Origin: Mytilus trossulus | Lineage: Eukaryota | Assembly (NCBI RefSeq): GCF_036588685.1 | Contig: NC_086386.1 | Location: 21,886,001-21,950,000 of the forward strand | DNA: 64,000 nt | Reading direction: 5' to 3' | Shown here: positions 2,061-49,765 of the stretch, one piece after another | Position numbering within the stretch: position 1 is the stretch's first letter | Layout of the letters: each line of letters starts with the position of its first letter | Translations under genes and position numbers: made by a program | The notes under the pieces: model-generated | What the model saw: only the letters and a program-made list of their open reading frames with translations | Told to the model about the DNA's origin: nothing | Database searches by the model: none

Positions 2061-5000
2061 CTATATGATGTCTTTGTATGCTGGCGGATTTTCTTTGGGT
2101 ATAGATGTTGTATCGTCTGCTAAATTAGTTACAGCGCCGTTATGTACGTCAACTACTGTGTGTGTTCTTGGATCAGAGGAAACATTCAGTTTGGCAGCTG
2201 TATTTCGATTTATAATATCTTCGTATGCTGGTGGATTCAAAGTGGGAGTATATGCTGTATCGTTTGGAAAATTAGTCTCACTGTCATTACCGGAGGTAGC
2301 ATTGGCAAGACTTTTCCAACCATTTCGACATCCAGTCTGTGTCTCAGGATTTGAGATAATAGCAGGTGAATTCCCATTGTCATGGTACAAACCTGATGTA
2401 AGAATTGTTTAGCATGATTATTTGTTGGTATACACATTCAAAATATCAAATGAGTAGATTTGGCGAAGTAAGTCTTTATATTTGAAAACCACTGACAAAA
2501 ACTAAGATCTATTAAGTTCATAAATTTTGTGATGGTTTAAGATTAAATAAAATGACTATACATAAATTCAAAATTAAGACCCTGTTCAAGGCAGACAATA
2601 CACGCATTATTTGATGGACTTTATGGTATTGAAACGTAGTACAAATAGATGTCACCCGTGCTTACAAATGACACAATAAACAAATTAATTAACGAAACTT
2701 TCGTGCTTCAATTGCAATGCAGATTCTACTTTATCAATTTAAACAACAGTTGTTATTCTATAGGATAATGGCAGTGAATACGGTTGTTAAACATTATATG
2801 CCTCTCACAGTAAATAATCCAATACAGATCGTAATTTGTATGTTTGCATCAACGTTTGCATAGTATTTACTTTTTCGAAATTGTTTTCCTCGAAACTGTT
2901 TTTGGCTTGGTTTGAATGATTGCCTTGTTTCGACTTGTTTTTCTTCTTTCACATCGTAATTTCCCAATTAAGTGTTAAACTGCAATCAGTAAAATAATTG
3001 ACGCTTGTAGCGCAAACAGTATCTGTTATTATAATTTTCGGGGGAAATAGGCCTAGGGGGACACACTTTATATGAAATTCACTTACACATACATGCAATT
3101 TGAAATATTCAGATCTTGAATTACTGATTATAAACGATTATCGTTTGGTCGCGTAATATATTATACTATAAATGTTATCTATTTAGCTACACCAGAAGTG
3201 CATTTTGAAAATAAGCATGTCATCAATGCAGCTTGAGACCATTTTTGTTGTTGGTAAAATCAAACCTTGAGCAATATTTTACTTGGTGTTTAAGCCACAA
3301 AATAACCTTAAAGTATATCCAAATACGAACATCTTACCAATAATACGATATTGTAGCTGTTCATTGGTTAATTGTGAGGTCCTTGATTGTTGAAAGCGTC
3401 TGATATTTTTTAGTTTCTTTGCATTTTTGTTTCTCATATAGTATCGACAGCAAGACAGGCAACATGAAATGGTAACTGCAAAAGGCAAAACAATTGCCCT
3501 GAAACGAAATACAATATAAAAAGAAGATGTGGTATGATTGCCATGAGACAACTATCCACAAAAGACCAAAATAACGCAAACATTAACAATTATAGGTCAC
3601 TGTACGGCCTTCAACACTGAGCAAAGCCCATATCGCATATAGTCAGATAAAAAAGGCCCCGATAAGACAATGTAAAACAATTCAAGCGAGAAAACTAACG
3701 GCCTTATTTTTGTAAAAAAATGAAGTATATTATTTGTATACAACAAACTTAATATCAAAATAAAAATAATGTTTCTGAAACATTTATTTATAGTTTTAAT
3801 AGGACTACCGTAGTTCAAATGTACCTCTCTGTGAAAATAATCAGATACAAAAGATGTGACATTATTTCATTTCTTCTATAGCGTCTAAATAGTATTCACT
3901 GTCTCATATATCTTTTTCCGAAAATTATAGCCTTTTATTCCATGATACAATGCATCAAAACTATTTTATGAGAATATGTTTGTCAATTACTCACATGCAG
4001 ACACACGTTAACAAAAGCTGGTGCTTCGCAGTGAAAAAAAGTAGTACAATCCAGTTCAAAACAACTGGTTTTTTTATTAAAATCTTTTGCGTTAATCGAA
4101 TTAAATATTTAATACATATGGTGTGTCCGAAACGCTTTTGGGATTTACAAAAATCTAAGCATTAGAAACCAACGAATTTGTTAATTCGCTGCAACTTCAA
4201 AAGCTATACGTCTAACCAAAAATCAAAAACGGCAAATGTATGTAAGTAGATATAAGAAGCTGATTATGAGTGCCTATTAGACAACTCTCTATCCAAGTCA
4301 CGATTTATAAAAATAAACCAAAATAGGTCAAAGTACGGTCTTAAACACGGAGCCCCTGCTCACAGCAAACATCAAACTCGGTCAGCTTAGCTCAATGAGG
4401 TTTGGGTGCCTGTAATGCGTAAATACAATACCAGCCTCTTTTTATCTAGTTTTACTAATTAATAGTAATAAACGGAGTTGGTTTTTCTATCTAATAAAAT
4501 TCTAGCTTGATACCAAAAAACATATTTAATCAATTTTAATGTTTTACTCGTTCCTTACGCAATAGCTCCAGAATTTGTTTCCGTCTCATTAGAGTTATCC
4601 ATTAAATATGCGTGTATCCAATTTCCTGTTTTCCCTCTAGTATATCTTGAAAAATCTCTTGACAGTGTCGGTTTTCTGAAATCAAGAATTTCATATTTCA
4701 GTTTACAAATGTATGGCGTTTTTCAATCGATATCTTTCACAAAAATAAATTCAACAACGACAACGAAGGTGAAATAAAAGCCATTGGTGGTATTGAAGTT
4801 CAAATACTACGACATGAGATAAACGCAAGGTAAATCATGCGTTTCACATGTGAATTTACAAACAAAATGCGTTTTTCAATTGATATCTTCCACACAAAAA
4901 AAACATAGGCGGAAATAAAAATGACCTTTGTTAGCCTTATAACATAAGTTCTAAGAAATGAGATACATTTAAAGTAAGTATAGTTGATATGTATAAACAA

Positions 5001-7568
5001 CATGTTAACTGTCAGAAAAAAACAAAATTCAAAATATACATAAATAAACAATGACTGTTTAGAGTTTTGATAAGTCACTACCAAAATTTTCCTATATGTA
5101 TTAGTAAATACATAATTGCCAAACACCTGACGTATGTGTAATGATTGTTATTGAAATCATCGACGTGGTCCAAGAATTGTATACATCCCAAGAGTACAGT
5201 TAAAAAAATAATATATCTGTGAATATCATATATCTCCCCAACAGAGGCGTAGTTTAAATCAGCTGTATTTACAAAGTGCAACCTAAAATATTATTAAAGG
5301 CAAAAAGGTGATGGAAGCGCAATGATTTTAAACTGCATTATTCAGCAGGACATTCCTTAAAACAAAACAAAAAGAACAATGGTGTAGTTGATACGACAGT
5401 TTATTGATTACACTTAATAATTGATCATTGGAAGGTTGGTTGAATTTGAGGACATCATTACACCACAACGTAATAGTAAAACATTATAATACTGAATAAC
5501 GTTCAAAGCACATGATCGTTTGGAGAGGTTTATCGTGAGACCCGAATCTACCAAAAATCTATAAACCGTCATGACAATAAAACCAACAAGTCAACAATAA
5601 TTAAATCAGTATAAAACAAAATAACTGAAATACAAAAGGAATGCAACACTAAACGAAAACAGAAGGGCAATCAATGAACAAAAGGCAAACCGATGAACAG
5701 ATAACACACAAAAGCGACATACAATAAGACATATACATGATATACATGTAACATTAAAAAACTCAAAATAAATAAGAAACATATATTCTAAAAAAAACAG
5801 GGGCAGTGCTCGTGGGAGAACAGAACTTGCTTCTTGAAATCAATTTTATTTAAATTTTATACATGAGGCATTCGCCTCAATGTAGTTACGGCCCTGTTGA
5901 ATAAAAGTCAGGTTAGTGTTCCTTAGACAATAGACCTCAAGTTGAATGAAACCAAATTTCAGACATTTCAAGTTCAAGTATATCTAAAAAACATTTATAA
6001 ATTTATTAGTAAAAGATTTGGGAAGTGACTCTTTTTTGTTGAAAAAATATGAATTTTATGACGAATCTAGTTCATCCCATACTTTTGGAAAATATTTATG
6101 AAATAGCTTAAAAGACCTGCCGAGTTATTTATTTTTGATACAGTGTAAGTCAGGTTATTTATTTTCAAATTACCACAGAACAAACCATTCATTGTTGTGA
6201 TTATCAAGGCTGAGTTATTTGTTTTCAAATTCCTCCTCCCTCCTCCGGAATATCAATTGGTCGTCCAAATTGCAGACGTGTGTTTCTAAATCATGCTCAT
6301 CTCTGTCTAATCCAAATCAGAACATGTAATTTAGTTTTGTAATCATTGTTTTTGTTTTTTTGCTGTACTGTTTTTTTTCTCGTTTTTTTCCTTTTTGTTT
6401 AAATTTCTTTGACATCAATCGAACTTCGTTTTTCACGTTTTGTCATGTCGAGGCCATGTGTTGTTTTAAACGGGATATATAGTTTGCTCGTTGTAAATGT
6501 TCGTATGGTGACCAAAAGTCGATAAAATGTAATCTTAGGGTTATTATTTTGTTATTTATCTAACATTAAAGAAATAAAAGACGATAACTGAAAGGAAAAG
6601 GTATGATAAGGGCCGTTTCTGGCCCCCCTTTTTTCGAGAATTTCAATGCCTGTTATTTTCTTGTTTGAACGTAATACATACACACATGCAAAGAGAGAAA
6701 GTAAAATGTCGTGCCAGTAGCTTTTTAACATGTTGCTTCCAGTAGCAGCTACTTCATACATTTCATGTAACCCATTTAATATGTTTATTCAGTATAATGG
6801 TAAATAATTTCAACGGGCATTTTATTATTGGGTTACAATGACAGATCTTTCCTTCTTGAAATTATGTATTTGGCGTTTACGTATAAGATTTTTTTAAAGT
6901 GTATTTCATACTTGATGATCATAAATACGTTTAAAATCTAAATAGTCGTCTACAAGTATTTGATACCAATACTTCAAGTATTTCGAGAAAGGAGGGAAAA
7001 GCTTTTAGTTTTTTTTTGGGTAAAGATGAATATTATTCAAGCAAGCAATAACTGATTGAAAAAAAAAACAGATAATGTTAGCTAGAACAATTTGTTTTAT
7101 GTTATCTACTGTTAATCAACAAAGCTCTTTTAAATGCGTTTGATGAACTATGCCTAAAATAAAATTACGCCAATTGGATTTCGCTTTTCAATGAAAAATA
7201 CCTAGTAAGAAAACATATTGCTTTATAATCCAATATAGTACTGACATTAATTATTTAATTAAAATATTCCCTGTAGATGGGTTATACGCCTATACATGTT
7301 ATATCCCTCACAATCGAAGAAATGGTTGATTATGGTTACAGAATATGTTGGAACAACATTCTTTACCCACAGCCGACCGAGATTGGTATCTTGTGATACA
7401 TTGCGTTATATTAGGATTACATCTATTGATTAATTAACAACTATTCGAGATGCATATATAAGCCTTATACATTAATAAATACACTAATAAATGCAAGTCT
7501 CACTTACCAGATGATGAATAAATCACCAACAAATGTAAAGAAAGTGTTGAAACTATATAACGCTCCAT
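2061..7568 (-). CDS. Gene A: single-pass membrane protein, Shisa/WBP1-like with PPxY tail, 268 aa; complement(join(2061..2392,3338..3498,4559..4675,5127..5262,7508..7568))
   Basis: Exons of 61+136+117+161+332 = 807 nt give an open frame; all introns are GT-AG with phases 1,2,2,1. Signal peptide MERYIVSTLSLHLLVIYSSSA, TM GAIAAIVLPFAVTISCCLSCC followed by RYYMRNKNAKKLK, tail with NPPAYEDI and NPPAYKDI. Exon 2 lacks the family Cys pattern and is the least certain exon. Confidence 0.8.
3515..3722 (+). repeat. Abundant interspersed repeat (AAGAAGATGTGGTATGATTGCC(A)ATGAGACAAC family)
   Basis: Further copies or fragments at ~4250-4370, 14100-14280, 49255-49565 (-), 50340-50680 (+), 55103-55165 (-) and 59700-60340 (-). 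Confidence 0.8.
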
Positions 7569-7591
7569 CGCCTTTAACAAGTCTGATAATT

Positions 7592-7765
7592 ACAGGAAGT
7601 TTCTTAGGAGGGATTCCATTTTATTTTTACTGCACCAGGAACAGTTCCTGTTATCATATTCTAAAGAAAGGTGTAATACGTAAACAATATCATATTTATA
7701 AAAAAAAACTTCATTCTGAATAGGGAGCTTATAAAGGGAATGCATGTAGATTATGTGTAAATATT
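7592..7765 (-). promoter_or_regulatory. Putative proximal promoter/5' UTR of gene A with an ETS-type site (ACAGGAAGT, 7592-7600)
   Basis: The blocks ATCCCTC(C/A)TAAGAAACTTCCTGT and CTCCCTATT.A.AATGA are conserved with the region upstream of gene C (37010-37142), while neighbouring non-coding DNA is not. Confidence 0.5.
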
Positions 7766-15291: not shown

Positions 15292-18200
15292 TTATAAATG
15301 AGTAACAGTACCGTCATTCGCAATATAATTGGCAAGCCTTTCCTCGTTGTCTTGTGTGTGTGTTCCTGGATTATATGAAACAATTGCGGCTGCATTTTCT
15401 TTCATGATATCCTCGTATGCTGGTGGACTAACTGTGGGCATATATTTTGTATCGTCAATGAATGTAAATACTGTGCCGTTATTTGGTATATGCTGGGTGT
15501 GTCTTTTCTCAACGTCTCCTGTGTATGTCCTTGGATTATATAAATCAATAGCGGTTTTATTGCCATTATTGATGATAGCTTCATATGCTGGTGGGTTAAC
15601 TGTGGGAAGAGATGCTGAACAGTCAGATGTAGAATTGATGAGCCTTTCCAAATCGGCTCCATAGCTCAGCTGTGTCCTTGGATAAGTAACACCGGCAACA
15701 GCATTTCCATTGTCATAGTACAAACCTAGTGTTAATAAATACACATCTGTTATACAAGATATTTACATTAATGAATTAAAAGCACAAAGATTATTTCGTA
15801 TCCCGATAGTGTGTTATTCTTATTTAATGTTTTCTTATTAACATTCTTTATTTTGAATTTTGATATTTCAATAACGGTCTTGTTTGTCCTTTTATTATAC
15901 TTTTGATTGTTGAATGTGTTTTTCGATATTTTTTGAGGTTTCAGCATTTCCAAGGTAAGAAGACAAACATATTTATTTTTAAGTAACGTTTTTTTTGTAT
16001 TGTTTTTTTGGGAGATTTTGTTTCAGGTTGATTTTTAAAATCTTACCTATAACGCTAAACTGTTGTTGTTCATTTGTCTGTTGTAAGGCCCTTGATTGTT
16101 GAAGACGTCTTCTATTTTTAAGTCTCATCCTACGTTGTTTCCTGTCGTTGTTTAAACAGCAACATACACAGACGAAGATTATCATTGCCACTACTATTAC
16201 TCTAAATTAATTGAAATAGAATTTTTAGCCGCACAAAGATTTCATAGGTTTATCTCACCATCGTTCGGGCATAAATAATCACGAATATAATGCCTACCCA
16301 TGTTAAAACTACTATAAAGTTTATCTTGCATCAGTTATTTCTTAACTGAATTTGACCAAGTATGGAATGTTTTTGAAACGAATATGTGATTATTTACAAT
16401 AGAGATAGGGATGTAACCATTGCGGTTTTTTTTATTTTGTTTTCTTTTTTGTTTTTTTTTTGTTTGTTTTTTTCTTCCCTATTGTAAATATTTAAATTTT
16501 ATTTTTCTTGATCTTTTTAATAGAATGTCATGAACAAATGTATATCTTGTAATTGTTTGAAATAAAAAAATTAAAAGTAAAAAAAAAATACGCTTACATG
16601 TATGTTACAGTAATTTACAACACTAACATCAAGACACCTTGAGGTAAAAATAGGCTTTGCCATAATGTGTTTAACATCAAACCGTACAGAGTAGAGAAAA
16701 GTGGTGATTGAAATGAGTTGTCTTGTGTTTACTATATTGGAGTTGCTTTTATTTCAAACCGATATGTACTTATCTTCAGAATGAAGGATGTAGGTTTGTA
16801 TTTCAATTAATATGTTTTGGGTATTTATTTACACGTTTTAAGTATTAAGTATACGATTTTCTTACGCTGGAAGAATTCGGAACAGGTTGACCTCTGAAGT
16901 AGGTTCGTATTCTGAATATCTGTACTCTGTTGTGCTTCTTATATATCTTGGAAATCTTCTGGACAGTATATTAGTTCTAAAATAAATATCATATAACTGC
17001 TAACATTTTTGTTCTTATTTTCCAAGTGACATCTTATAAAAATCTTTCATCAAATATAGATGAAAGTAACAATATTTTGTTTAAAATAAGATTAAAAAGC
17101 AGAACAAACTTATGTACAATTTCGTTACAAATGAAGGAAATATATTTAGCAAAAAAAAATAATTTATGAATTAAAACGTGCTTTTAGCTGTGTAGTAACC
17201 AAAGACCTTAAGCCACATCTGAAATATGCATATGACGGTTTGTTTTAAAACAGATGTTTACAACGACAAGTATAATTCAAGAAAAAAATATGCTGTTTCT
17301 ATTTATGACACCAAAAGCAAGTGACTACTACTTGTATTGTTGTCCATCTTAAAATCATGGTGAGGCAGAAGCTCTCATTTTATATTCTTGCCAGATCAAA
17401 GGCTTACGTAATGTGAAAGTTTCAACTTTATTGTCATGGTTAAAAACACGCCAAACGAATAACCCGAATTCGAAAAGCCTTGACGCCCAAACAAAGAGTG
17501 GATTTATATTTATTATCATATCAATGATAATTCATGTCAACACAGAATTGATAGTTCGATGCTCATCTTATGCGGAATGAGTGTTCTGTTCATTCGTTTG
17601 TCAGTTTTATATTTTTATAGGCAACTAGTGTAACGAGTTACTGTTTCTTTGCATACGAATCTTTTACAGTTGAAACGATATCGCAGGTGTTTTATTTCCT
17701 ACAATGATTTCCACGAAGGATGGCTTCTGATCACAAGGAAACTATAAAACTAAGAGTTTCTAGTGGTGCCGTTGAACTTATTTCCTTTACAGTCAACATT
17801 CAGATTTGGTTAACAGTTATGGAATATCCATTGAAAAGATAATAGATGTTGTTTTTATCTAATTGTTGTAATTACCGTCCAGTCCGCCGTTCCCCGAACG
17901 CGACCTACCGAGTTAGAGATGTAATACCAATATTTTATAGTACGTCACATCCGATTGCATACGTGAAATTGTCAGACACAACATTCCCTTGAAATTGGCA
18001 GTTAATCTTTCATATCATTGCAGAAAGAAGAAAAAATCATAAATATATAGCTTGGGTGGATTGAAGGACCATTATTCTTCCATTTAGTGTTTCTATAGAA
18101 TATATTGAACACTCGTCTTTGCATGGTTACTGAAGCTTGTAAACAGAAAAAAGGTGGACATTTGATTGGTTAACTTCCAGTGATGTTTTTGTTTCGTACA

Positions 18201-21200
18201 TGCAATAAATTATTATATGACATTTTGTCTATAGTACTGAAAATTTCAAAACTTCAATACTCATGCAATATATTTCTTTATTTGAAAACAAGATACTTTG
18301 TGTACCATTTTTTTTTCATTTTATATAAGAGTTAAAGGGGAGAATTGATGGTGGTATAACAACTAGAATGATTACTGGGTTTGTTGTTATGTACGCAAAC
18401 CAACGGGTCCCACATGAGGGACAGGACCTACTTTCTCTTCTGGAGCACATCAGAATCTCAGCGGTGTTTGACGTGGTTCATATTGTTCTGTCTTCTATTG
18501 TTTATCTCAATGTTTTTGAGCCATGACGTTATTTTTAACTAATGAATATCCCTGTTGGTATCTTTTGCTACTCGTTTACACACGTATTGTTTTTGTCTGA
18601 TTGTGCAATACCAAGTGACGCATTTTCAGTTCCATCCATGTTTTACACTCTGGTTTTCTAGTTATTGTAAGTAGACAAACAAGTGATTGATGGTAAATCT
18701 GATGTGACTAGGTATAAATGCAAGTCTCCATTTAAAACTTCCGTGTAAACTTCTCTGTTAAAATTCAGAACGTTAGAGTATCCGTTTTTTTCAATTTTTC
18801 AGTGTTAATTTTAATACCGCATCCATTTGTTTCGTTCTGAATATGGTAATGCATATATAAAAGGTCTAGTTAGGAACTTAAACTATTTATGATTTAAATT
18901 GATGTTTATAAGTATAAATATCGGGTTTTCTACACATTGATATCGTAAAATATCAGCCGAGAGCCACAATGAGAATCTGTTTTGAGAGTGAGGACAGCAA
19001 ACGAGCTAAAAGGTTTCACATTGTGTGGAGCGGCTGATATTTCACAATATCTATACGAAGAAAACCCGATTATCTGTTTATCGTTCTATCACTAGTCTTT
19101 CCCCACTTCCTAAGATATTTTTACGCTTGACGAAAGTCAGCTTGATAACGTCTTATCCTCTCACATTGTGTTGTCGCTGAAAATGCTTGGTCTCGTTTTT
19201 AGGTCTTGATACGAGAATTACGGAGCGACAGAGCAGAGTGATATAGGTAAGAAGGACGATAAAAAGTAAAATCACAAAAATAGTGAGCTCCAAGGAAAAT
19301 TTAAAACGGTAAGTCCCTAATAAAATAGCATGATCAAATGATAAAACACATTAAACGAATGGACAGCAGCAGTCATATTCCTAACTTGGTACAGGCATTT
19401 TTAAATGAAGAAAATTGTGCATTGAACCTAGTTTAATAGCGCTAAACCTCTCACTTGTATGACAGCCGCATCAAATTCTATCATATTTATAACAATGTGT
19501 ATAAGTACATTTAAAATTTTACAAAAAAATTACATTTTACAAAAAAATACATTTTACAAGATTTTTTAAAAATAAAAATAAATAACAAAGAAAACTGTGA
19601 TTTCATATAATCAAGGCTTCTTTATAAAGTATGATATAATCTAAATGTTGCTAAAATAAAATATTGATTTAAAAGGGCGAATTCTAGATAAAAAATGTAC
19701 TAAAATAGTGTTTTTCCAATTTAATTATGATGACTACGTATACATATCCGTAATCAAAATATATACTTTTGGTGAAGAAAAATATTTGTCTTTTCCCAAA
19801 CGGAAATGATATTTTCTATTACTATCGGTTTCGAATATAATACGTTAATTATAAAATTTCTACACTGATTTCCATACATATTTATATGTACCTTAGAGTT
19901 TTGTAAGAGTTTTTACCAATGTTCATCCTATTCATGTTTCTATTTCTTTGTCGTCGGTTATAAGTTGTCTTGATATAGGCTGGTAAAGTAGTTGTATACG
20001 TCTGATGTCGTGTTCTCTTGATCTTTTTATAAGAGTTGGACCTTCAAATACAATTATGTTGCATGAGTGTAATGCTCGCATACATAAGAGGATTAACTTG
20101 TAATATTTTGCAATCATTGAAGTCATGTGTATCAAATATCACAGTTTCTTAAATCCAATTTTTATGAATGAATTTGCTTTCGTATAATTTTTAACGAGTA
20201 GCACGTGGCAAAAGATCACTCCACCAGAAATTTAATGTAAACGAAATTAACATAACAAATGAAAAGAACGGGATAAAGTGCTAAGAAATTGAAACTGCTC
20301 AATCTATACAGATAGCTCGTGTGAGAAAAAGATAAGATATATATGGTGTTATGTATAAATATATTGATGGATTATAGTTAATTACATTTTACATAGATAT
20401 ATGTTGCCTAAAATGCAAGTATTTCTTCATTTGACCATGGAAGTATTATATTGACAGGAACTACAACGATTAATTAGCATTTATTTATAACCCGGGTTGC
20501 CCTGTAGAAAAGATATGGAAACTGTCTAATTAGCACGCTGTCGTTAATTTCTTTTGTGATTATCTGCGATGCCGCGGTCATCAATTGACCAGAGATGCTT
20601 CTTATCAATCACGTGGTTTTAATCGAGACAACTTAACAATATTACCTGTCGGAAAACACCTTTACATATCTCAATCGCGTCGGTAGACCTTTATTCGTGA
20701 ACAATTTATTCAAACAAATCGACTGATGCATAAAAAATGAAAATCGGCCCAGAATTAATTATTCTACAACGATTTGAAATAGTGAGCGACATTATTTTAT
20801 TAGTTTGTGGGTGAAGTTTAAATCTCGATTAAGGTGTGTTCCGGGTACCGCCGGTTAAAAATAAATATATTTGATAAATATTAAAACTGTGAAGTTGATA
20901 GTAATATATATAGTTAAGTTACTGGATAATCTTGAAAAGTAGAAATTTCGAGTTTACAATACGAAAATTAATCGAGCAAGTACCAATCAACAAAATACAG
21001 CATAAGAAAACAGAGATCTAACAACGCTGTATAGCTATTTATATAATACATTTCTGTCCCCTAAAATTTATCACTATCCGACAAAAAGAAACCGTTTAAA
21101 TAATACTGGTAAATATTATTGAACAGTCGCACAAGAATTTGTATAATGTCACTATACAAATCATCGAGTCGCAGTACTAAAAAAAATCAACGCTTCGGCG

Positions 21201-36474: not shown

Positions 36475-36592
36475 AGGTATTTTAATGTACCAATCCATGT
36501 AAATTACAATTAGTTTGTTTCCGAATAATCATGTTTTATTTTTAAATATATATGCGCATTTGAAAGAAATAAAACATTCCCAAATATCAACC

Positions 36593-39500
36593 ATGTTTCT
36601 ACAATGTATAATACTCTGCATAATCTACACTGCCCACGGTAAGCCTATATCAAATATAATGTTAATTGAATGGATAACGCAAGTAAATCATAATTTGTAC
36701 TGAATAAATTGGAGTATTACAAAATAAAAACTAAATTTAACGGTCGCTAGCATTGCCTTTAACTTTGGAAATAGCTAATTGGTATAATATATGCACGTTA
36801 AAAGCTATGATTGAATAATATTGTGAATAATTTTCAACAGAATAAAAATTAAATTGAATGTCAGGCCAGGTTTGTATGAGGCCAAGTCGCGATACTTACT
36901 TTTTCATTATCTGTTGCGTTCAAAATACAAAGAATTAATACTTGCAGACATTGATCAAGTAATGTTACTTTACTTCATTTAGATAAGTCTACAACTGATA
37001 TCTTTAAAGAGATCTACACACAACTTACATGTATGTGAAGTCCCTTAAAGATCTCCCTATTTAAAATGATTTTTTTTCAATAAAGCTTCCTTATTCTTTG
37101 TTAAAGACACAACAACAAAATCCCTCATAAGAAACTTCCTGTTACAGTAATTAAATCCGACTTGTGAAAGCAATGGAGACTAATATGTTTTCGGCAATAT
37201 TTTTTTTTTTACTTTTGTAATTTGATTTCTTTATCATCTGGTAAGTGAGACTACAATTTAATTCATGTCGTGTTCAAAACAAATGTAAATGATAATCGTT
37301 TATAGACATTTATTCGAGCGGTAATGTACTGCACTTTCTAGAAGATGTTAACATAGGTTTGGACTGTGTAAATAATTTGATTGCAACACATTATGCATAA
37401 TATACAACCATTTTTTATTAGTTGAGATAGATAAATTGGGTATTGAGTTATGCCACACACCAAACAAAACATGTTCACTCAAATAGTTATTCATTATGAT
37501 TACTATTTTCGAAAACATTTAGAAGTTGTCCACACAGAATTGCACGTATGAAAAACATCTCAAAACATATATTACTAATGTGGCAAATACAAGAGTCCGT
37601 AAACTGAAAGCTAATTTCTCGCGTTCTTTCAGTAGTCATCTTATCGCAATTAGCTTAAACATATTTATTTATAGTTGATTGGGAAGCAAGTTTTGCAACG
37701 TATAGTAATCCCTTTCCACTGTGCAGGTACGAGTGCTGCCTTATAGCGGCATCAGCCTGCTCATTTTCGAAATCTACAAGGGTGTCTTTAACGTGCAAGA
37801 GATATGGCTCTCTCTTAACACGGGTCAGTCATTTGTCGTCCCCTTCCGACGAACTATCATCGTTTCCTTAAGACCATACTTGCAGATGGTGTCAAAGGAG
37901 AGCCAAAAATTGAGTTCATGAAATTTTCATCCCGAACGGGAATCGAACCAGGAACCTTTGTGTTAGTAGTCCGATGCACTAACCTCTAAACCACGGCTCG
38001 CTATCTTATCACAATTGAATAGGGAGAGAATACATTTACTGTACGTTTACCCTTCAACATGTTTGTGCTGCTACAAAGTAAGCATCAGAAAGAGATCATC
38101 TTAAAATTGCTATCAGGAACGAAACTATCACTGACTTCTGTTTCAGAGGTTCACAATATTGAGCAGCTTTTTTATATTCTGTTTCGAAGCAGTGTTTGGA
38201 ATTTCTAAAATGTATTTTTGAAATTGCAATACGAAAGAAACTTCAAATACAAATCGAAAATATGGTTTGCAAAATGGTCACGTCTTACATATATTTATTA
38301 CCAAGGAATTCTGGACTTCATAACAACCTAACTTTCTACTTCCTTTTGCTATTTGCAGCTCAGGCGCCGGGTAGGATAACATTATGTGAGTACATATCGT
38401 CGACTGAATTATATTATTGTTCAATAATAGAAGAATGTTGTTACGTCAATGGTGAATGGAGATGCATAAACCAACTCAACAGCGCTTTCCATGGCGATTC
38501 TGGAAACCAACCAAAATGTGAAAAGTATAAAAAAAATCTTTTAATATTATCATACTTTCTAAAAAAAAATTTTACCATGAAACGAACTTTTTATTTAGTT
38601 CTCTCTTATTTTGTTCTTTCGTTAATTGATTTTATCGTGCTGGTCTGCAACATGCTTGTATGTGATAAGATATGAAGCATCCTTTAAAATAGCATTGTAG
38701 AATCCTCAAGACTCATTCTTTGTAATCCAATACTTTTCTGATATTAGCTATTTCTCTCAACACAAATTTTTTTATACTTGAGGGGTTACGTGAGCGATTG
38801 TGACAGGAGTAAAATGGTTGTGTTGGTAAACAATTTCAGGCAACTTCTCCAATTTTTGAATCACAAATTTTAACATGTCTAAAAGCGAACGTTATTTTTT
38901 GTTATCTATCTTGCAATGGATTATGAAATTACGAAATTACCATCCAGTTTTGGTATTTCAAAAGGATGAATATGATTTTGCCATAAGAGAAATAATAGTT
39001 TGCATTATTGAAGCAATCAAATCTTTCTAACACTCATTTGAATTTTAATTTTGACAATTTACATCTTTTACATACATATTATTCTAATCTAGATTTAATT
39101 GGATTACGTTTAAGTTCATCGCATGTCATAGTAATACAATTTTAAGACCATCAATGACAATTGTTGCATTTCATTTTTTGTTTAATTTATTTAACTTTCT
39201 AATTGGAAAAACACACTTTTTAAAACTGCAATTCAAATTTCATAATTTCAGAAAATCGACGCGGTCAATAGACCCTTCGACGATAAACACATATTCAAGA
39301 GATAACTCTGATGAGAAGACAAGTTCTGGAACTATTGTGTAAGGAAAGAGTTCACAAATCAAATTAGAAATACATTGGTTTTAAGCTAGAATTTAAATGA
39401 CGTGAAAAATATCGTAGGCTACACTACTTATAAGTACAACTCGATGCAGATATAAGCGCATTAACGCATCCCAGGCTTTCAAACTGTCCAAGTAAAGTCA

Positions 39501-41054
39501 ACCTTAGAAGATGTTTTTATTCCGTTTTGGTTCTCCCTTGTCCTTTGTCATATCGTTTCTAATGTTGCAGTGTATTTACAACTCACTGTGTTACAACTGT
39601 CACATTTACGAAACAATTATTAAACAAAGCTTTTTGATATAGTAACTACTTGTGTCGATCTGATTCAAGCCGTGTTTATATGGTTTTGCATGTATCTGTA
39701 TGTGAATGAAATACACACATACTCTCATAAAATAGAATTCTTTAAATTAGAAAAATACTGAACACCAAGGAAAATAAAATATAACGCTTTCCGGACGCAA
39801 TCTTATGTGACGTTGACGGTGAATGCTATTTTAAATGTTAATATCATTTTCATTAATGTCACATCTGTTATATCTGATTAGTGTCAAATAATGTATACTT
39901 GGACTATTTTCGGTCTTTTAAACCTAAACTATAATTTGAAGTTTTCAAACACAATAAGGATTTGGATAAAACAATGAACTTTTTTTTCGTTTTAGCCCGA
40001 TTGTGATTCCTTTCGTATTGATCATCTCCTGTGGTATGTCTTTCTGCCGATACTACGTGTGGAACAAAAAAGCCAAGAAACGAAAAATCATACGTTTACA
40101 ACAATCAAGGACCGTTAGACCAATCAGCGAACAAACACAGTACCGTATTTTGGGTAAGAGTTATTTGTTCTATACTTACAGGTTGGAAAAGTTTTTGTTT
40201 TAACAAAACATTTTGCTGCAATCTTTACTTTAGAGATATACACTGTCGACATGTGCATCTGGTTTCAGAACAATTGATACCTTTAATGTTATCATATAGC
40301 ACCAGAACTACAACCGATTACAATCAATACTACTATTGATCATTTTAGGTACACTGGTAATTTCAAAATACATCTATGTTTAAAATAATTGCATGTAATT
40401 TTATCCCTTTTTTTATCGAATACTTTTATAACAGATTACAGTTGTATGTTTATTATCATTTAAAAAAAGAAGATACTTTTATCGGTTCTTACGTAAATCA
40501 TACATCGAAGTAAAAGCAATTCATGAATGAGGACATTATTAATTGAAAAGTAACATAATAAAGGAAACAAGACCAAACAAAATAAACGTTTCTGAAATTA
40601 AAATCACAAAATAAAAAAACCCATTACAAACGAATATACAGAAGATACAAATACATTCATGCATATACATATAAGAAAGTATAGAGTAGCCAAATTTAGT
40701 TAAATAGTAATTATTCTTACATCAGATTTGTACCATGATAATGGGAATTCAGCTGCTATTATCGCAAATCCTGAGACACAGGGTGGGTGTCTAAATGATG
40801 GGGAAAGGCTTGACACTTCCACCTTAGAAAACAACAATGGAGATTACTTACAAGACGATACAACCTATACTCCCACTGTTAATCCACCAGCATACGAAGA
40901 TATTATAAACCGAAATGTAGCTGCCATTGATTCCGTTGATCCAAGGACACACAGATCAGTTGACGTAGAAGGGCTTGCCAATTCTACCATAAGCAACGAC
41001 TATGTAACTACAGCATCTATACCCAAAGTCAAGCAGCATACAGCTATCTTATAA
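36593..41054 (+). CDS. Gene C: single-pass membrane protein, six-Cys ectodomain, one PPxY; join(36593..36638,38359..38524,39252..39338,39996..40153,40726..41054) = 261 aa using the B-type exon 1
   Basis: 46+166+87+158+329 = 786 nt open; GT-AG introns, phases 1,2,2,1. Ectodomain C-x10-C-x5-CC-x7-C-x17-C; TM GTIVPIVIPFVLIISCGMSFC, then RYYVWNKKAKKRK; NPPAYEDI. Which first exon is used is uncertain. Confidence 0.8.
37010..37172 (+). promoter_or_regulatory. Putative native promoter/5' UTR of gene C with an ETS-type site (ACTTCCTGT, 37134-37142)
   Basis: Conserved with the region upstream of gene A (7592-7765). Confidence 0.5.
37173..37240 (+). other. Native (A-type) signal-peptide exon 1 of gene C, frameshifted by one extra T as assembled
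   Basis: Homologous to gene A exon 1, including the donor TCATCTG|GTAAGTGAGAC. T11 (37200-37210) gives TAA at 37218; T10 would give METNMFSAIFFFYFCNLISLSS plus a phase-1 donor. Confidence 0.75.
37652..38002 (-). mobile_element. tRNA-derived SINE with a Meta-domain-like core, in intron 1 of gene C
   Basis: Head GAGCCGTGGTTTAGAGGTTAG (A box) ... GGTTCGATTCCC (B box); internal CTTGCACGTTAAAGA; 14-bp TSD ATCTTATC(G/A)CAATT (37638-37651, 38003-38016). Confidence 0.82.
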
Positions 41055-41114
41055 AGGAATAATGTGTATGCACTTGTATTGCTTTACGATTTGGCATACT
41101 TTTGTGCGTATTTT

Positions 41115-45300: not shown

Positions 45301-47747
45301 AACTGTCATATTCCTGACTTGGTACAGGCATTTTCAAATGTAGAAAATGGTAGATTGAACCAGGTTTTGTAGCTCTAAACCCTCTCTTTTACGACAGTTA
45401 CACCAACTTCCGATGAGATTTTTATTTTAATGTGCAGACATTATAGATGAAAGACGATGTTTACTGTTTGATTGGTTTTTTTATCGTTTAAGATTAGTAA
45501 ACTAAACAAACAAAATATCACTGTGAGGGGATACGATTTCTGCTGGATTTTGAATATTTTCCATTGTTTTATTCTTTACTTCAGCATGACCATCATTTAA
45601 AGAGTTCTATTATAAATTAAAATTTTATTTTTTTGAATTGATAAAATTTTAAATTTTAAAAGTCATAACCGAATTACGAAGCGACCACTAATTTCGCAAA
45701 AATCGATTTTTTTTTCAATAAGGAGGAACACCAAAGGTACATATAGTTTATCTAAAAACAATGGATGTATCCATCCACACAATAAGGTCAAGAACAAAAG
45801 GAGAATACTTTTTACAAAGATTTAAAAAAAAGGTACGCGACCTACCATAAAATCTAAACAATGATTTTAACATGGTTAGTTTTTTTTCATTTTAACTAGG
45901 AATGAATAGTGTCATGAATGATTCAATTATCAAGATGAACGAAATACCGGCTTATTGCACAAGTACTATATAAATTAAATTTTAGGTCAATGTCTGCATA
46001 AGTACTATTTTTTGTATGAGGTACACAATCGGGAAGGGTCGATGTTTACTGGCATTTTGGCAGTTCCGTTCTAAATTCAAAAACGTTAACATTTCAGACA
46101 TAGATTAAGTACATTTTACACCATCTTTGGCCGGCTACAACAACAAAACTTTTTAACACAACAGACATTGATTTCCAGTCCCTTAAAGCGCCTCCTATTT
46201 GGAGTGGAGTTTTTACACTTTTATTCAATTTTATGAAGGCCATAGTGATAACAGGAACTGTACATGTTCTTGCTGCAGTATACAACAAAATGGAATGCCT
46301 ATAAATAAAATTCCTGTTATATTAATTAAATCCGTTTAAAAGGCAACGAATATCAATGTAGTCTCATTATTTGTTTTATGTTAACATTTGTAATTTGATT
46401 TCACAATCTTGAAAGGGAGTCGAACATTTAATTGTCGATGCAACATCTATATATTTATGTTATTCTATGTTTAAGGCTGTCATATGCATTATGAATAGTT
46501 GTTTTGGACCTTTTATTGCAATGGTAAATACTAGTACGCAATTTTTGAAATCTTTTATAGATAAACTTAACCTTAAACGGCAAGCATAGTCAACAGCGCA
46601 AAATCAACAAATAAATAAATATCTCAAAAATCGTCGATACAGTCATTAGATGGGTTTCTGTACATAAAAGCTAACTCTTAAAGCTTTTATCTATTATCAT
46701 ATAAAACATTATTTGTAGATAGAGACTTTTAATGGTTAACAGGACAAGATCTCTATTTCATTTGAACAATTGGTGTTTAAGCCACTTCCAACACTAGTGT
46801 GCTATTTGGAGGCTGTCAGTAATTTTGACGGAAGAAGCCGGTGTTTACAAGACTTCTTCATTTTTGAGCAAGAGAACATTGTTTTGAAATAAACAGTGAA
46901 AAATGATTCTTAGTTCATACTTTGATGATAAGGTTGCATTTATTAACCCTAATATCCAAAACAATGTGCTTTTGGACAGGAGTTTGATTGATGTTGCATA
47001 AATCATTAGAAGCCAAAGTTATAGTTAAAAGTCAATAGTAGTATACAGATGTTAAAAAGTCTTTTATTGATTAAGAGAAAACAAGTCCGGGTTACACATT
47101 AAAACCAAGAAACAAATCATCTACAATTGGAAAATAACAAAACAATAAAAACACTCAACTGTAAACACAAACAAACACCAACATACATAGAAACGGGCTA
47201 TTTGATAACAACTGACTTCGTACAGGACATTGATAAACAATGGTCGGTTTAACCTGGTTTATGGCTAGTCAAAACTTCTACTTATACATGTTAAATATCA
47301 ATGTTAAAAACATAGACGGTGACAGAAATAATATAAACACGACACAAGAACACTCAGAACAAAGAATTTTATAAATAAATACTATAATAGTAAATGACAA
47401 CATGAAAACTGCAGAATAACAACGGACATCTTCAAAAAATAATGACAGCACAGAACACCACACACTGCATGTCTGATAATCTGTAACATGCAATTATATT
47501 GAACCGGATTTTAAAAATTAACAATTATTCCCACAATACAAGTCAAACTAAATATCATATTCATGATAGACCTTATCAAAATACTGAAATAGTTAAAGGC
47601 GTGTTTTATTCGAAAAGAGATAAATCTATATGCAACCAACGGTATCCCTCAGAAACAACGATATAGGTAGTTTAATAACGGACATTTTCCTTTTTTAATT
47701 TCAAAACACATTATTTGTAAATTTATATATAATTATCTTTGTTTCAG

Positions 47748-49690
47748 AAACCGACCAAGTCGATTGGATATTGGATATACAGACACAGATTTGAAATTCT
47801 GAAGAAAATAGCAAGCAATTAGAATAAGTAATAATTGACTCTTAATTAGGTTTTTATTTTTAAACATCAAATTATTTTGTAAAAATTACTTTGTTTCCGA
47901 CTATTCTTTTCAACTGGATTTGAAGAAAAGATGGCATTAAATACTCTTTAGACAAAGCATATGAGTAAAGTTGAAAGTAAAAAATACCATATACCACAAC
48001 AAGATAATGATTAAATGTATAAATCAGAGTCACACTAAAAATTAAATAAACCAGAAAGATTAATACAATATTTAGTAACTATGTTATGAAGGTCTCAGGA
48101 AAAATATTTAATATTAAATTTTTTTAAACATTTTTGTTCTTTTTTAGACTAATTGCATGGTCTGTTGTTAGTATCATCTCACTATTTCTGTATTGTTGTC
48201 GATATTTTCACCATTTACGGACCCATGATACTAAAACACTAGAAAATATCATGTACCAAGTAATCAAGGCCCTTACAACTTACCAACGAACAGCATCGTT
48301 CTATTGGTAAGATTTTCGGATTTGCCATACTTTAAGGAGTTATTTTTAAGTATAAACACCACGTAGAATTATACAAGCAAATGACCTCGAGCTTATTGAA
48401 ATGATATATTATGTCAAAATGCACATAAAGGCACAGTAATGTTGATTACGTTAATGTCATTATATCAGGACAAGACTATCACCAATTAGAACCAGTAACA
48501 TACTGGATCTTTTGATATATAATAGTAGGTCGATAAGGCCCTACAATGACTCCTTATCTAGCTTCAATTCAAATTGTTCTTATTACCAATATTACATCGA
48601 TTCATAGCTAAAACAGTGACTAGATACCAAATGAGTTTTTTTTTATGTTACTGTATTTTATTCATGACGTCACAAATAGTACTCGTTTTGATTTTCAATG
48701 ACAAATCAACGAAAATCACTAAATTATCATTGTAATTGGACAGGAAACATATAGCGCATACATCAACAAAAAAGAACTTTGAAAATGATGTTTTTAATAT
48801 ACTTAAATATTTATTTTGTCGATGTCTACGCTTTATGTTTCATGGTCCTAAATTTCGGCTGAAATATGGCTTATTTTGTCAAATTTGATTAGTATTCCTT
48901 AGTTTGACCTAATTGCAATTTGTAATGTAAAAATATTTCTTTTACAGAATTAATTCTATATAACATTATCACATGGCATTTATCGAATTTACTCTTTCAT
49001 GTGTTACTTCAAGTTTTTCTATTTTTCCAAATACTTTTATAACAGATACAATTTGTATATTTAGTTTTATTTTAAATACCAGATCCTTTTGTACGTTTTT
49101 TTTCCGTGTATTCGGTAACAAACCGAAAGATGAACAATACATCGGAAAATTTAAAGGCAAAAATAAATAATAGGAGACACAAGTCCATTAGTATTCAATT
49201 AAAACCAAGTACAATTTCAAAGAGACTTAGTGGAAGAACAGAATACTTCACAAAATAAGTCCCGCTAACATGTTTAACCCCGCCACATTATTTATGTATA
49301 TGCCTGTCCCAAGTCAGGAGCTCGTAATTCAGTGGTTGTCGTTTGTTTATGTGTTACATATTTGTTTTTCGTTCATTTTTTAAAATTTAAATAAGGCAGT
49401 TAGTTTTCTCGTTTGAATTGTTTTACATGCTCATATCGGGGCCTTTTTATAGCTGACTTTTTTGAAGGCTGTACGGTGACCTATACTTGTTAATGTCTGT
49501 GTCATTTTGGTCTATGGTGGACAGTTGTCTCATTGGCAATCATACCACATCTTCTTTTTCATATATGGCATATTAGTATAATATAGTACCCATTAGTCAA
49601 AATAATAACAATTAACATTTAAACATCAGGTTCGCACCATGGAAATGAGAATCCAGCTGCTCTTATTGCATATTCAATAAACAGGATGTA
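47748..49690 (+). pseudogene. Gene D: pseudogene paralogue (relics of exon 3 ~47748-47828, exon 4 48148-48306, exon 5 start 49630)
   Basis: TTTCAG|AAACCGACC matches the exon 3 acceptor of A. Exon 4 encodes LIAWSVVSIISLFLYCCRYF...SRPLQLTNEQHRSIG|GTAAG with a frameshift/stop. Exon 5 begins ACATCAG|G-SHHGNENPAALIAY and then runs into 3'UTR-like sequence. No exon 1 or 2 was found. Confidence 0.8.
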
Positions 49691-49765
49691 TTCCGTTTGT
49701 TTTTACATACTTTGGCTGTTTATTAAAGTCATAAATTTGAATAAAATTAACTTTCATATCATTGT

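What the first reader, a model, noticed from the sequence alone, without database searches (positions are those of the whole stretch)
2061..49690. Hidden cluster of four Shisa/WBP1-like membrane adaptor genes with divergent ectodomains and variable PY tails
Seen: three spliceable five-exon genes plus a pseudogene with identical intron phases, each exon matching one module (signal, Cys domain, stalk, TM plus basic stretch, tail). B and C share C-x10/13-C-x5-CC-x5-W-x-C-x15/17-C, but most residues between the cysteines differ, whereas the cytoplasmic QQSR...EQ, LYHDNGN and PPAYEDI motifs are conserved. Known: Shisa-like proteins (WBP1, VOPP1, TMEM92, CYYR1) combine a six-Cys ectodomain, juxtamembrane cysteines and PY motifs that bind NEDD4-family WW domains; their usual pattern ends in an adjacent CC, which differs from this one. 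Inference: a lineage-specific birth-and-death family of variable receptors or adaptors that couple diverse extracellular partners to ubiquitination and endocytosis, possibly immune-related. I cannot tell from sequence alone whether it has been described.
Basis: partly seen in the sequence, partly recalled or inferred. Interest (0 to 1): 0.85.

Follow-up and report, generated by a model that had tools for sequence, protein, structure and literature searches.

The report
Mussel-only PY-motif membrane protein cluster

Summary
The motifs and homologous exons are real (within-window E 1e-10 to 1e-33). The window is Mytilus trossulus, and the cluster is not hidden: RefSeq lists all four loci as "uncharacterized protein".

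- Gene A has no Cys-domain exon. A transcript contig joins exon 1 directly to exon 3, out of frame, and the RefSeq ORF starts at an internal Met (178 aa: short stub, TM, PY tail).
- Gene B has six exons, not five.
- In gene C, the exon 1 that its M. edulis orthologue uses is frameshifted in a T11 run, and RefSeq gives a truncated 148-aa ORF.
- D is a pseudogene, as claimed.
- The cluster extends left of the window, with an intact gene Z and a twin of D.

Homologues were found only in Mytilus. Pfam gives nothing significant: WBP-1 matches are sub-threshold and cover the TM region only, there is no Shisa_N match, and the tails are not proline-rich. Shisa/STMC6 resemblance is therefore architectural, and homology is unproven. 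WW binding is inferred; the complex prediction gave no answer and two AF2 models were unusable.

New lead: B's Cys domain and the adjoining stalk differ by about 27% between M. edulis alleles, while the other 233 residues differ at one site (p 8e-15).

The parts
7508..7568 (-). Gene A exon 1 (MERYIVSTLSLHLLVIYSSS + G, phase-1 donor). Homologous to exon 1 of Z and to C's exon 1a.
   Evidence: Alignment. AG/GT and frame. A contig of run X4 covers 7508-7638 and stops aligning at the donor; the X3 contig joins this exon to exon 3.
4559..4675 (-). Gene A exon 3 (stalk). Read from exon 1 it is out of frame and stops at TAA, overlapping the ATG of MDNSNETETNSGAI (TAATG). The RefSeq ORF starts at that ATG.
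   Evidence: joint 3497->4558 in 4 runs; 4676->7542 in X3; P0041.
3338..3498 (-). Gene A exon 4: TM helix, SCCLSCC cysteine cluster, basic stretch, QQSR..TNEQ.QYRII.
   Evidence: Spliced joints on both sides in four runs from four studies.
2061..2392 (-). Gene A exon 5: tail with LYHDNGN and two PY motifs (PPAYEDII, PPAYKDII), then the stop codon.
   Evidence: Joint 2390->3336 in four runs.
27555..27600 (-). Gene B exon 1 (MFLQCVILCIIFTAN + G), inside the left arm of the quasi-palindrome.
   Evidence: Identical to the N-terminus of RefSeq XP_063413811.1.
24077..24251 (-). Gene B exon 2: six-Cys ectodomain. This is the part that is hypervariable between alleles and species.
19892..20041 (-). 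Gene B extra stalk exon (SNSYKKIKRTRHQTYTTTLPAYIKTTYNRRQRNRNMNRMNIGKNSYKTL), phase 2/2. Present in 2-3 tandem copies in M. coruscus models. Missed by a five-exon model.
16866..16976 (-). Gene B stalk exon b (TNILSRRFPRYIRSTTEYRYSEYEPTSEVNLFRILP).
16047..16201 (-). Gene B TM exon (VIVVAMIIFVCVCCC, basic stretch, QQSRALQQTNEQQQFSVI).
   Evidence: Weak sub-threshold WBP-1 hit here only.
15292..15725 (-). Gene B tail exon: LYYDNGN and two PY units (PPAYEAII, PPAYEDIM), then the stop codon.
36593..36638 (+). Copy of B's first exon in the right palindrome arm (MFLQCIILCIIYTAH + G, donor GTAAGC). A possible alternative first exon for C; its use is unverified.
   Evidence: (91% identical to the B copy).
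37173..37240 (+). Gene C exon 1a (METNMFSAI...), the first exon used by its M. edulis orthologue and homologous to exon 1 of Z and A. It is 68 nt against 67 in Z, because of an 11-T run at 37200-37210, so the frame hits TAA.
   Evidence: The M. edulis orthologue P0027 uses this exon intact.
38359..38524 (+). Gene C exon 2: six-Cys ectodomain. It uses a weak GTATAA donor, because the donor position used by Z (AG|GTTCTT) is lost in C.
   Evidence: The junction CEK|KSTRS is also used in M. edulis model P0027.
39252..39338 (+). Gene C exon 3 (stalk).
39996..40153 (+). Gene C exon 4 (TM, basic stretch, QQSR..EQ). RefSeq's 148-aa ORF starts at the Met inside this TM segment.
40726..41054 (+). Gene C exon 5: tail with LYHDNGN and one PPAYEDII, then the stop codon.
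46294..46409 (+). Pseudogene D, exon-1 relic: ATG->ACG at 46346-46348, in-frame stops, donor GT->GA.
47748..47800 (+). Pseudogene D, exon-3 relic, truncated. No exon-2 relic was found.
48148..48305 (+). Pseudogene D, TM-exon relic with a frameshift and a stop in the QQSR motif. The twin relic left of the window has the same lesions.
49630..49690 (+). Pseudogene D, first ~20 codons of the tail exon (SHHGNENPAALIAYS). The rest, including the PY motifs, is deleted.

Best explanation
The region is part of a Mytilus-restricted gene cluster on M. trossulus contig C14. In chromosome order it reads D'(-) Z(-) A(-) B(-) | C(+) D(+).

The full-length form (B and Z; C on paper) has six parts:
- a signal peptide;
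- a ~55-aa ectodomain with six cysteines, C-x10-13-(Y)C-x5-CC-x5-WKC-x15-17-C;
- a Ser/Thr/Asn/Arg-rich stalk made of one or two phase-2/2 exons;
- one TM helix ending in a cysteine cluster, which is a likely palmitoylation site;
- a basic stop-transfer stretch followed by the conserved QQSR..TNEQ.QY..G-LYHDNGN;
- a tail with one or two PPAYEDI units.

The most likely mode of action is inferred, not shown. The PPxY motifs would dock WW domains of NEDD4-family HECT ligases, which this genome encodes. The protein would then act as a membrane adaptor or substrate that routes itself and bound partners into ubiquitin-dependent endocytic sorting. The overlapping YEDI (YxxPhi) may add AP-complex sorting.

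Gene status:
- B and Z are intact.
- A has physically lost the Cys exon. It is transcribed as exon 1-3-4-5 and can only make a stub-TM-PY-tail protein from an internal ATG.
- C carries lesions and may be decaying, or its T-run may be mis-assembled.
- D and D' are dead.

B's ectodomain is far more variable between alleles and species than the rest of the protein.
For: Gene family and models.
- Exon homology.
- Splice-consistent models identical to RefSeq proteins of the same contig: P0045 = B, P0040 = Z, P0041 = A, P0022 = C ORF. Their contig length of 81,773,519 equals that of C14.
- Spliced contigs across A's introns 3 and 4 in four runs from four studies, and an exon 1->3 join in X3.
- mRNA-like Logan ORFs: P0036 is 364 aa in a 1,256-nt contig, and P0001, P0018 and P0019 are similar cases.

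Restriction to Mytilus.
- Family members came only from Mytilus.
- In this genome, every match to the tail, Cys or TM exon lies in this one cluster.

Features.
- The hydrophobic scan finds one TM segment in B, Z and A, plus the signal peptide in Z. It also shows cysteine clusters at the cytosolic end of the TM, a +7/+8 net charge after the TM, and PPxY positions.
- Invariant or near-invariant C, W, K, QSR, EQ, NGN, P-Y-E-I columns.

Ligases present.
- WW exons lie next to HECT exons at C4:26.23-26.25 Mb, C6:82.15-82.17 Mb and C7:64.54-64.55 Mb.

Established knowledge.
- PPxY tails of STMC6 proteins bind WW domains of NEDD4-family ligases and WWOX (PMC11399591, PMC6125347).

Constraint.
- dN/dS is 0.15-0.30 for the TM exon in the older paralogue pairs.
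- A is 82% identical between M. trossulus and an M. coruscus-like transcript ORF, against 65% for B's 3' part in M. trossulus vs M. coruscus.

B hypervariability.
Against: - No binding, localisation or ubiquitination was tested. The WW-PY complex prediction gave no answer (0.23 against a mark of 0.34).
- The tails are not proline-rich.
- C vs Z dN/dS is about 1 in exons 2 and 4 and 2.9 in exon 5. Counts are small, but this is compatible with relaxed constraint.
- A's main ORF sits behind a 44-codon upstream ORF. By my reading of the sequence, the upstream ATG has G at -3 and G at +4, a strong context, so translation of the main ORF may be poor.
- The runs used are labelled 'RNA? (a guess)'. 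Only the intron-less joints argue that they are RNA.
- The expression evidence for B, C and Z rests on RefSeq models and on Logan ORFs from other samples, not on reads laid here.
Confidence: 0.6

Rival explanations
1. The genes are true, highly diverged members of the Shisa-like/STMC6 superfamily (WBP1, WBP1L, VOPP1, CYYR1, TMEM92). They would be homologues, not look-alikes, and would work as those proteins do.
For: - Six cysteines in the order C*C*CC*C*C in B, C and Z. This matches the first six of Shisa's C*C*CC*C*CC*C (PMC10531659) and the defining 'conserved 6 cysteines' (PMC6125347).
- One TM helix with juxtamembrane cysteines and PPxY motifs.
- Recurrent weak WBP-1 (PF11669) hits in several members, and one CYYR1 hit at E 0.03.
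- Shisa-like-2B appears at rank 12 among language-model neighbours.
Against: - There is no Shisa_N hit at all.
- WBP-1 hits are 10.7-18.5 bits against a 28.1-bit cut-off and cover only the TM and basic stretch, never the Cys domain.
- Atlas scores of about 0.8 are at chance level, and the ectodomain alone gave no usable hit.
- Tails hold 5-7% proline.
- A 30-90-aa stalk separates the Cys domain from the TM.
- No PDB sequence match.
- AF2 models were too poor to compare folds.
Confidence: 0.3
2. The tails signal or sort through the tyrosine itself, independently of NEDD4 ligases. This would work through YEDI as a YxxPhi motif for AP-2/AP-1, or through phosphotyrosine docking. The PPxY would be incidental.
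For: - Y, E and I of PPAYEDI are near-invariant along with the second P.
- The unit is repeated with a conserved context (TVNPPAYEDIIN..AAI).
Against: - The second proline of PPxY is near-invariant (P225), and every PY unit listed has both prolines. A YxxPhi motif does not need them.
- The residue at -2 is Pro, so the motif is not ITIM-like.
- The ~50-aa spacing of the two units is not ITAM-like.
Confidence: 0.2
3. The cluster is mostly evolutionary debris. It would be a young orphan family drifting towards loss, transcribed but without a selected function.
For: - Two dead copies (D and D').
- A lacks its ectodomain and reads out of frame from its own start codon.
- C is frameshifted, and its M. 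edulis orthologue has a gutted exon 2.
- C-Z dN/dS is about 1.
- No homologues outside one genus.
Against: - B and Z keep intact ORFs with all six cysteines in M. trossulus, M. edulis and M. galloprovincialis; M. californianus and M. coruscus also have full-length B-type models.
- Z is 97% and A 96% identical between M. trossulus and M. edulis.
- TM-exon dN/dS is 0.15-0.30 in the older pairs.
- B's tail is 100% identical between two M. edulis alleles whose ectodomains differ by a third.
Confidence: 0.12

Closest known systems
STMC6 / Shisa-like single-pass adaptors (WBP1, WBP1L/OPAL1, VOPP1, CYYR1, TMEM92; Pei & Grishin 2012, as cited in PMC6125347 and PMC11399591)
   Same: Signal peptide, small six-cysteine ectodomain with an internal CC pair, one TM helix with cysteines at its cytosolic end, and multiple cytoplasmic PPxY motifs. 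In the known proteins these motifs recruit WWP1, WWP2, ITCH, NEDD4L or WWOX.
   Different: No significant Pfam match to Shisa_N, WBP-1 or CYYR1. A long Ser/Thr/Asn/Arg stalk lies between the Cys domain and the TM. The tail is not proline-rich and is built from a ~50-aa unit ending in PPAYEDI. Conserved QQSR..TNEQ and LYHDNGN motifs have no counterpart that I could find. The family is confined to Mytilus.
Shisa proper (Shisa1-9)
   Same: [quoted passage not shown]
   Different: Shisa has eight cysteines (C*C*CC*C*CC*C) and a proline-rich tail.
Cys-domain-less PY-motif membrane adaptors (TMEM207, NDFIP1/2, Commissureless/PRRG4)
   Same: Gene A's product (178 aa: 15-aa stub, TM, two PPxY motifs) has the layout of a minimal PY adaptor. 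TMEM207 is described as an STMC6 relative without the cysteine-rich domain (PMC6125347).
   Different: A arose by loss of an exon from a Cys-domain gene, and its ORF lies behind an overlapping upstream ORF. No homology to these families was detected; the Comm hit at E 0.055 is noise-level.

Membership tests
STMC6 / Shisa-like superfamily | N-terminal extracellular domain with six conserved cysteines in the order C*C*CC*C*C, after a signal peptide | tested here: met
   B, C, Z and their orthologues have C-x10-13-C-x5-CC-x7-C-x15-17-C. Five of the cysteines are invariant and the sixth is near-invariant in 12 sequences. A and D have no such domain. The canonical spacing could not be checked against the original paper, which is not held.
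STMC6 / Shisa-like superfamily | Significant sequence-profile match to Shisa_N (PF13908), WBP-1 (PF11669) or CYYR1 (PF10873) | tested here: not met
   There is no Shisa_N hit at E<=10. WBP-1 scores 10.7-18.5 bits (cut-off 28.1) over profile positions 24-74, which is the TM region only. CYYR1 scores 15.1 bits (cut-off 31). Whole-genome family scans were uninformative.
STMC6 / Shisa-like superfamily | Single TM helix with cysteines at or near its cytosolic end | tested here: met
   One TM-type hydrophobic segment in B, Z and A. Cysteine clusters are CVCCC (B), SCMFCC (Z) and SCCLSCC (A).
STMC6 / Shisa-like superfamily | Proline-rich C-terminal region | tested here: not met
   Tail proline fraction is 0.049-0.069.
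STMC6 / Shisa-like superfamily | Cytoplasmic [LP]PxY motifs | tested here: met
   One (Z, C) or two (A, B) PPxY motifs in the tail.
STMC6 / Shisa-like superfamily | PY-dependent binding to WW domains of NEDD4-family ligases or WWOX | tested here: inconclusive
   Complex prediction of C's tail residues 35-70 with a WW domain from the C4 NEDD4-like gene scored 0.23 against a mark of 0.34, which is 'no answer'. A pull-down is needed.
STMC6 / Shisa-like superfamily | Shared fold of the cysteine-rich domain | tested here: inconclusive
   AF2 models had mean pLDDT 41.8 and 39.3, with the ectodomain at about 35-55, so no fold search was run. The profile found no PDB sequence match.
Mytilus LOC134696123/LOC134696298-type family (this cluster) | Conserved TM exon (QQSR..TNEQ.QY) joined in phase 1 to a tail exon starting LY(H/Y)DNGN and carrying PPAYEDI | tested here: met
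   A, B, C and Z all meet it. D keeps only broken relics.

The most novel reading that the evidence does not exclude
Gene B is a polymorphic recognition receptor. Its Cys domain and first stalk segment would persist as ancient, divergent allelic lineages: type I in M. trossulus and M. edulis, type II in M. galloprovincialis and M. edulis. These types are 65-69% identical, which is as far apart as either is from the M. californianus or M. coruscus genes. Recombination would keep the PY-motif signalling half nearly identical. That pattern is expected under balancing or diversifying selection on a ligand-binding surface (pathogen, gamete or self/non-self recognition) coupled to ubiquitin-dependent endocytosis.
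Probability: 0.2. Interest if true: 0.8.

Novelty: new variant of a known kind. Interest (0 to 1): 0.5.

Why it matters
If the inference holds, mussels have evolved, or kept in unrecognisable form, their own family of PY-motif membrane adaptors. One small locus would then show every stage of the family's turnover:
- an intact conserved member (Z);
- a member with a hypervariable ectodomain (B);
- a member reduced to TM plus tail (A);
- a decaying member (C);
- dead copies (D and D').

That makes it a compact natural experiment on how ectodomains and NEDD4-docking tails are mixed, lost and maintained.

The allelic dimorphism of B is a testable lead for recognition biology. It matters in a genus known for extreme heterozygosity and gene presence/absence variation (my own recollection, not checked here).

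For annotation, the work shows why RefSeq's ORFs for A (178 aa) and C (148 aa) look truncated. A has lost an exon. C has a T-run frameshift that needs checking against reads.

Tried and rejected
- **Pfam on exon peptides and on full-length natural proteins.** Only sub-threshold hits came back: WBP-1, CYYR1, TMEM171 (best 23.5 bits, cut-off 27), Comm, Hemotin and others. All were rejected as evidence.
- **Whole-genome scans with PF13908 and PF11669.** No matches, and the controls did not ring either, so they are uninformative.
- **ESM Atlas.** The whole protein gave chance-level scores of about 0.8 (PTTG1IP, EB, UL132, Shisa-like-2B at rank 12). The ectodomain alone gave no usable hit.
- **PDB profile search.** Nothing at E<=10.
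- **Two AF2 jobs with 8- and 12-row alignments.** Mean pLDDT was 41.8 and 39.3, so no fold search was run.
- **Complex prediction, WW domain against C's tail.** The verdict was 'no answer', which counts neither for nor against binding.
- **Candidate exon 2 for gene A.** The Cys-containing ORF at 7311-7433 is in a frame incompatible with exon 1's phase. The ORF at 5609-5839 looks repeat-derived, and no contig joined it to A's exons. Both were rejected.
- **Possible relic of an exon 1a upstream of B (~25,050).** The similarity is too weak to call.
- **Literature.** A search for PPAYEDI or LYHDNGN found no paper. The search for Mytilus with PPxY and NEDD4 listed nothing on such a Mytilus protein among its top ten. 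Pei & Grishin 2012 is not held.
- **Joined spliced proteins.** Searches used single exons by reference, or natural database proteins returned by the tools.

Full report
**What is in the sequence**

The window is AT-rich (about 31% G+C) and holds no N. PPAYE(D/A)I, LY(H/Y)DNGN and QQSR occur on three loci:
- the minus strand at 2.0-3.5 kb;
- the minus strand at 15.3-16.2 kb;
- the plus strand at 40.0-41.0 kb.

Translated self-comparison shows that the TM exons and tail exons of these loci are homologous (E 1e-10 to 1e-33). It also finds a fourth, broken TM exon at 48.1 kb. Two exons carry C-x10/13-C-x5-CC-x5-W-x-C-x15/17-C, at 24091-24228 (-) and 38385-38519 (+).

**Identity of the genome and existing annotation**

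The window is contig C14:21,886,001-21,950,000 of a 1.30-Gb assembly. Proteins returned by the searches carry RefSeq names from Mytilus trossulus. They sit on a contig of 81,773,519 bases, which is exactly the length of C14. All four genes are annotated as "uncharacterized protein":
- LOC134696298 is Z, just left of the window (284 aa, P0040).
- LOC134696623 is A (178 aa, P0041).
- LOC134696123 is B (356 aa, P0045).
- LOC134696205 is C (148 aa, P0022).

The cluster is therefore uncharacterised but not hidden.

I searched exon by exon by reference, then used these natural proteins. By eye they equal my exon-wise translations.

**Gene models**

*Gene B* has six exons, not five:
- 27555-27600;
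- 24077-24251;
- 19892-20041;
- 16866-16976;
- 16047-16201;
- 15292-15725.

All have AG/GT boundaries and phases 1,2,2,2,1, and the model is identical to XP_063413811.1. The extra phase-2/2 stalk exon is present in the M. edulis and M. californianus orthologues and tandemly repeated in M. coruscus models. A 364-aa B-type ORF in a 1,256-nt Logan contig (P0036) looks like a spliced mRNA.

*Gene Z* lies in L009 and has five exons. It is intact and equals XP_063414082.1.

*Gene C* is spliceable on paper as 36593-36638, 38359-38524, 39252-39338, 39996-40153 and 40726-41054. There are three problems with it:
- The first exon is the copy of B's exon 1 that sits in the right arm of the 9.4-kb quasi-palindrome. 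It is 91% identical to the B copy.
- The first exon that C shares with Z and A, and which its M. edulis orthologue P0027 uses, is 37173-37240. Here it has 68 nt instead of 67 because of an 11-T run, and it runs into TAA.
- C has lost the exon-2 donor position used by Z and would have to use a weak GTATAA donor.

RefSeq gives C only a 148-aa ORF that begins inside the TM segment and has no hydrophobic segment left. Whether the T11 run is a real lesion or a homopolymer assembly error could not be tested here.

*Gene D* is dead. Its start codon is now ACG, the exon-1 donor is lost, and there is no exon 2. Exon 3 is truncated, exon 4 has a frameshift and a stop in QQSR, and the tail is cut after about 20 codons. 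Window 41.8-50.75 kb, including D, is an inverted duplicate (85-91% identical) of the region downstream of Z. That region carries a twin relic with the same lesions.

**Gene A: the main correction**

A has an intact exon 1 (7508-7568). Between it and exon 3, no sequence is homologous to the Cys exon of C, Z or B. No stop-free, phase-compatible Cys-rich exon exists there either.

I laid the Logan contigs of four runs from four studies on window 2000-7700. They gave intron-less joints with GT..AG ends at 2392|3338 and 3498|4559 in all four runs. In run X3, one 342-nt contig continues from the start of exon 3 directly into an allelic version of exon 1. In run X4, a contig covers 7508-7638 and stops aligning at the donor. 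No listed joint links anything between 4677 and 7507 to A's exons.

Exon 1 ends in phase 1 and exon 3 expects phase 2. The junction therefore reads out of frame and stops after 44 codons at a TAA that overlaps the ATG of MDNSNETETNSGAI (TAATG).

Four lines of database evidence agree:
- RefSeq starts A's protein at that ATG.
- The M. edulis and M. galloprovincialis models do the same.
- The transcript-like Logan ORFs P0018 and P0019 do the same.
- An M. coruscus model (P0028) also reads exon 1 straight into exon 3 in that same frame.

So the exon loss is old and shared. A can encode at most a 15-residue stub, the TM helix and a tail with two PY motifs. A is 96% identical between M. trossulus and M. 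edulis and 82% identical to the M. coruscus-like ORF. B's 3' part is 65% identical between M. trossulus and M. coruscus. This hints at constraint on A but does not prove translation.

**Family range**

The following searches returned family members only from Mytilus (M. trossulus, M. edulis, M. galloprovincialis, M. californianus, M. coruscus and unnamed Logan contigs):
- a profile of the four tail exons against 1.84 billion representative proteins, which gave 13 hits, with the weaker ones being long repeat proteins;
- three word-index searches.

None of these proteins has a precomputed Pfam domain belonging to the family itself. Within this genome, every match to the tail, Cys and TM exons lies in this one cluster.

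**Is it Shisa/WBP1-like?**

Several features fit at the level of architecture:
- a signal peptide;
- six cysteines in the order C*C*CC*C*C;
- one TM helix with a cytosolic cysteine cluster;
- PPxY motifs.

Shisa proper has C*C*CC*C*CC*C (PMC10531659). STMC6 proteins are defined as single-TM proteins with six conserved cysteines and proline-rich, PPxY-bearing tails (PMC6125347, PMC11399591).

It does not fit at the level of homology tests:
- There is no Shisa_N hit.
- WBP-1 hits recur, but at 10.7-18.5 bits against a 28.1-bit cut-off, and only over the TM and basic stretch.
- The tails hold 5-7% proline.
- A 30-90-residue stalk intervenes between the Cys domain and the TM.
- The PDB profile search, the ESM Atlas and two AF2 models gave nothing usable.

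I therefore describe the family as working like an STMC6-type PY adaptor. I do not file it as a member.

**Mechanism**

Shown here:
- the genes, their splicing for A, the membrane-protein features and the PY motifs;
- NEDD4-type genes in this genome, with WW exons next to HECT exons on C4, C6 and C7.

Inferred from established PPxY-WW biology:
- the tails recruit NEDD4-family ligases;
- the proteins are sorted, with whatever their ectodomains bind, through ubiquitin-dependent endocytosis.

The only direct test I could run was a complex prediction, and it gave no answer.

**Divergence pattern**

Between paralogues, the ectodomain is the least conserved module and the tail the most:

| Pair | Ectodomain identity | TM-exon identity | Tail identity |
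|---|---|---|---|
| B vs C | 25% | 30% | 53% |
| C vs Z | 56% | 62% | 77% |

Per-exon Nei-Gojobori dN/dS gives the following (small counts, and dS is saturated in old pairs):
- 0.15-0.30 for the TM exon in the older pairs;
- about 1 for C-Z in exons 2 and 4.

More telling is the comparison of B across alleles and species. Two M. edulis proteins from syntenic positions (P0044 and P0043) differ at 28 of 105 aligned residues in the Cys domain plus the first stalk exon. They differ at 1 of 233 in the rest (Fisher p 8e-15).

There are two ectodomain types:
- Type I occurs in M. trossulus and in two M. edulis haplotigs.
- Type II occurs in M. galloprovincialis and in the M. edulis RefSeq assembly.

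The two types are 65-69% identical. That is as far apart as either is from the M. californianus or M. coruscus genes, although the 3' halves within the M. edulis complex are 91-100% identical. Z shows no such contrast: 2 of 60 against 6 of 224 residues differ, p 0.68.

It rests on gene models from different assemblies, so it needs nucleotide-level population data.

**Verdict**

This is a real, Mytilus-restricted, uncharacterised family of PY-motif single-pass membrane proteins undergoing birth and death.
- The gene models for A and B are corrected, and C's is questioned.
- Shisa/WBP1 homology is unproven.
- The function is inferred.

Interest is moderate. The best lead is the allelic dimorphism of B's ectodomain.

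Noticed in passing
window 27410-36792: A quasi-palindrome. The arms 27410-31235 and 31379-36792 are 78-89% identical.
   Followed up: partly
window 41802-50753 and L006 (C14:21866001-21876000): An inverted segmental duplication, 85-91% identical. It carries pseudogene D and a twin relic with the same frameshift and stop. The whole cluster is therefore roughly mirror-symmetric (D' Z A B | C D), although C and Z themselves are only about 74% identical.
   Followed up: partly
window 34330-35359 (+): Two ORFs with weak QRICH1, DUF3504 and Phage_integrase hits. They look like a Crypton-type tyrosine-recombinase transposon fragment inserted in the right palindrome arm, in the locally G+C-richer 34-36 kb stretch.
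   Followed up: partly
window 41115-41748 / 41746-42378: A 634-bp tandem duplication, 99.7% identical, immediately 3' of gene C's stop codon.
   Followed up: no
window 3512-3724; also 49372-49564, 50340-50553, 60129-60342: A ~210-bp repeat family (79-83% identical), with one copy in A's intron 3. It is covered at very high word depth in all four runs (tens of thousands) with many variant joints. It is probably an abundant transcribed MITE or SINE.
   Followed up: no
window 38166-38675 (+) and 23938-24288 (-): Stop-free frames of 170 and about 120 codons run through the exon-2 donors of C and B into hydrophobic, TM-like stretches. This is unusual for 31% G+C DNA but may be a T-rich-codon artefact.
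   Followed up: no
window 1206-1811 (-): A 202-aa ORF with no Pfam match. A 171-bp stretch within it (1275-1445) matches 30266-30436 at 74%, so it is probably part of a repeat element.
   Followed up: partly
window 62001-64000: G+C rises to 0.42 with a strong negative GC and AT skew, unlike the rest of the window. Not examined.
   Followed up: no
G000 C4:26230734-26248987; C6:82152673-82173643; C7:64538844-64554127: Three loci with several WW exons followed by HECT exons on the same strand. These are the candidate NEDD4-family ligases of this genome.
   Followed up: partly
M. coruscus proteins P0003/P0015: These gene models fuse a B-type gene, a temptin-like/Cu2-monooxygenase-C segment and an A-type gene. 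No temptin-like sequence lies between B and A in this window.
   Followed up: partly
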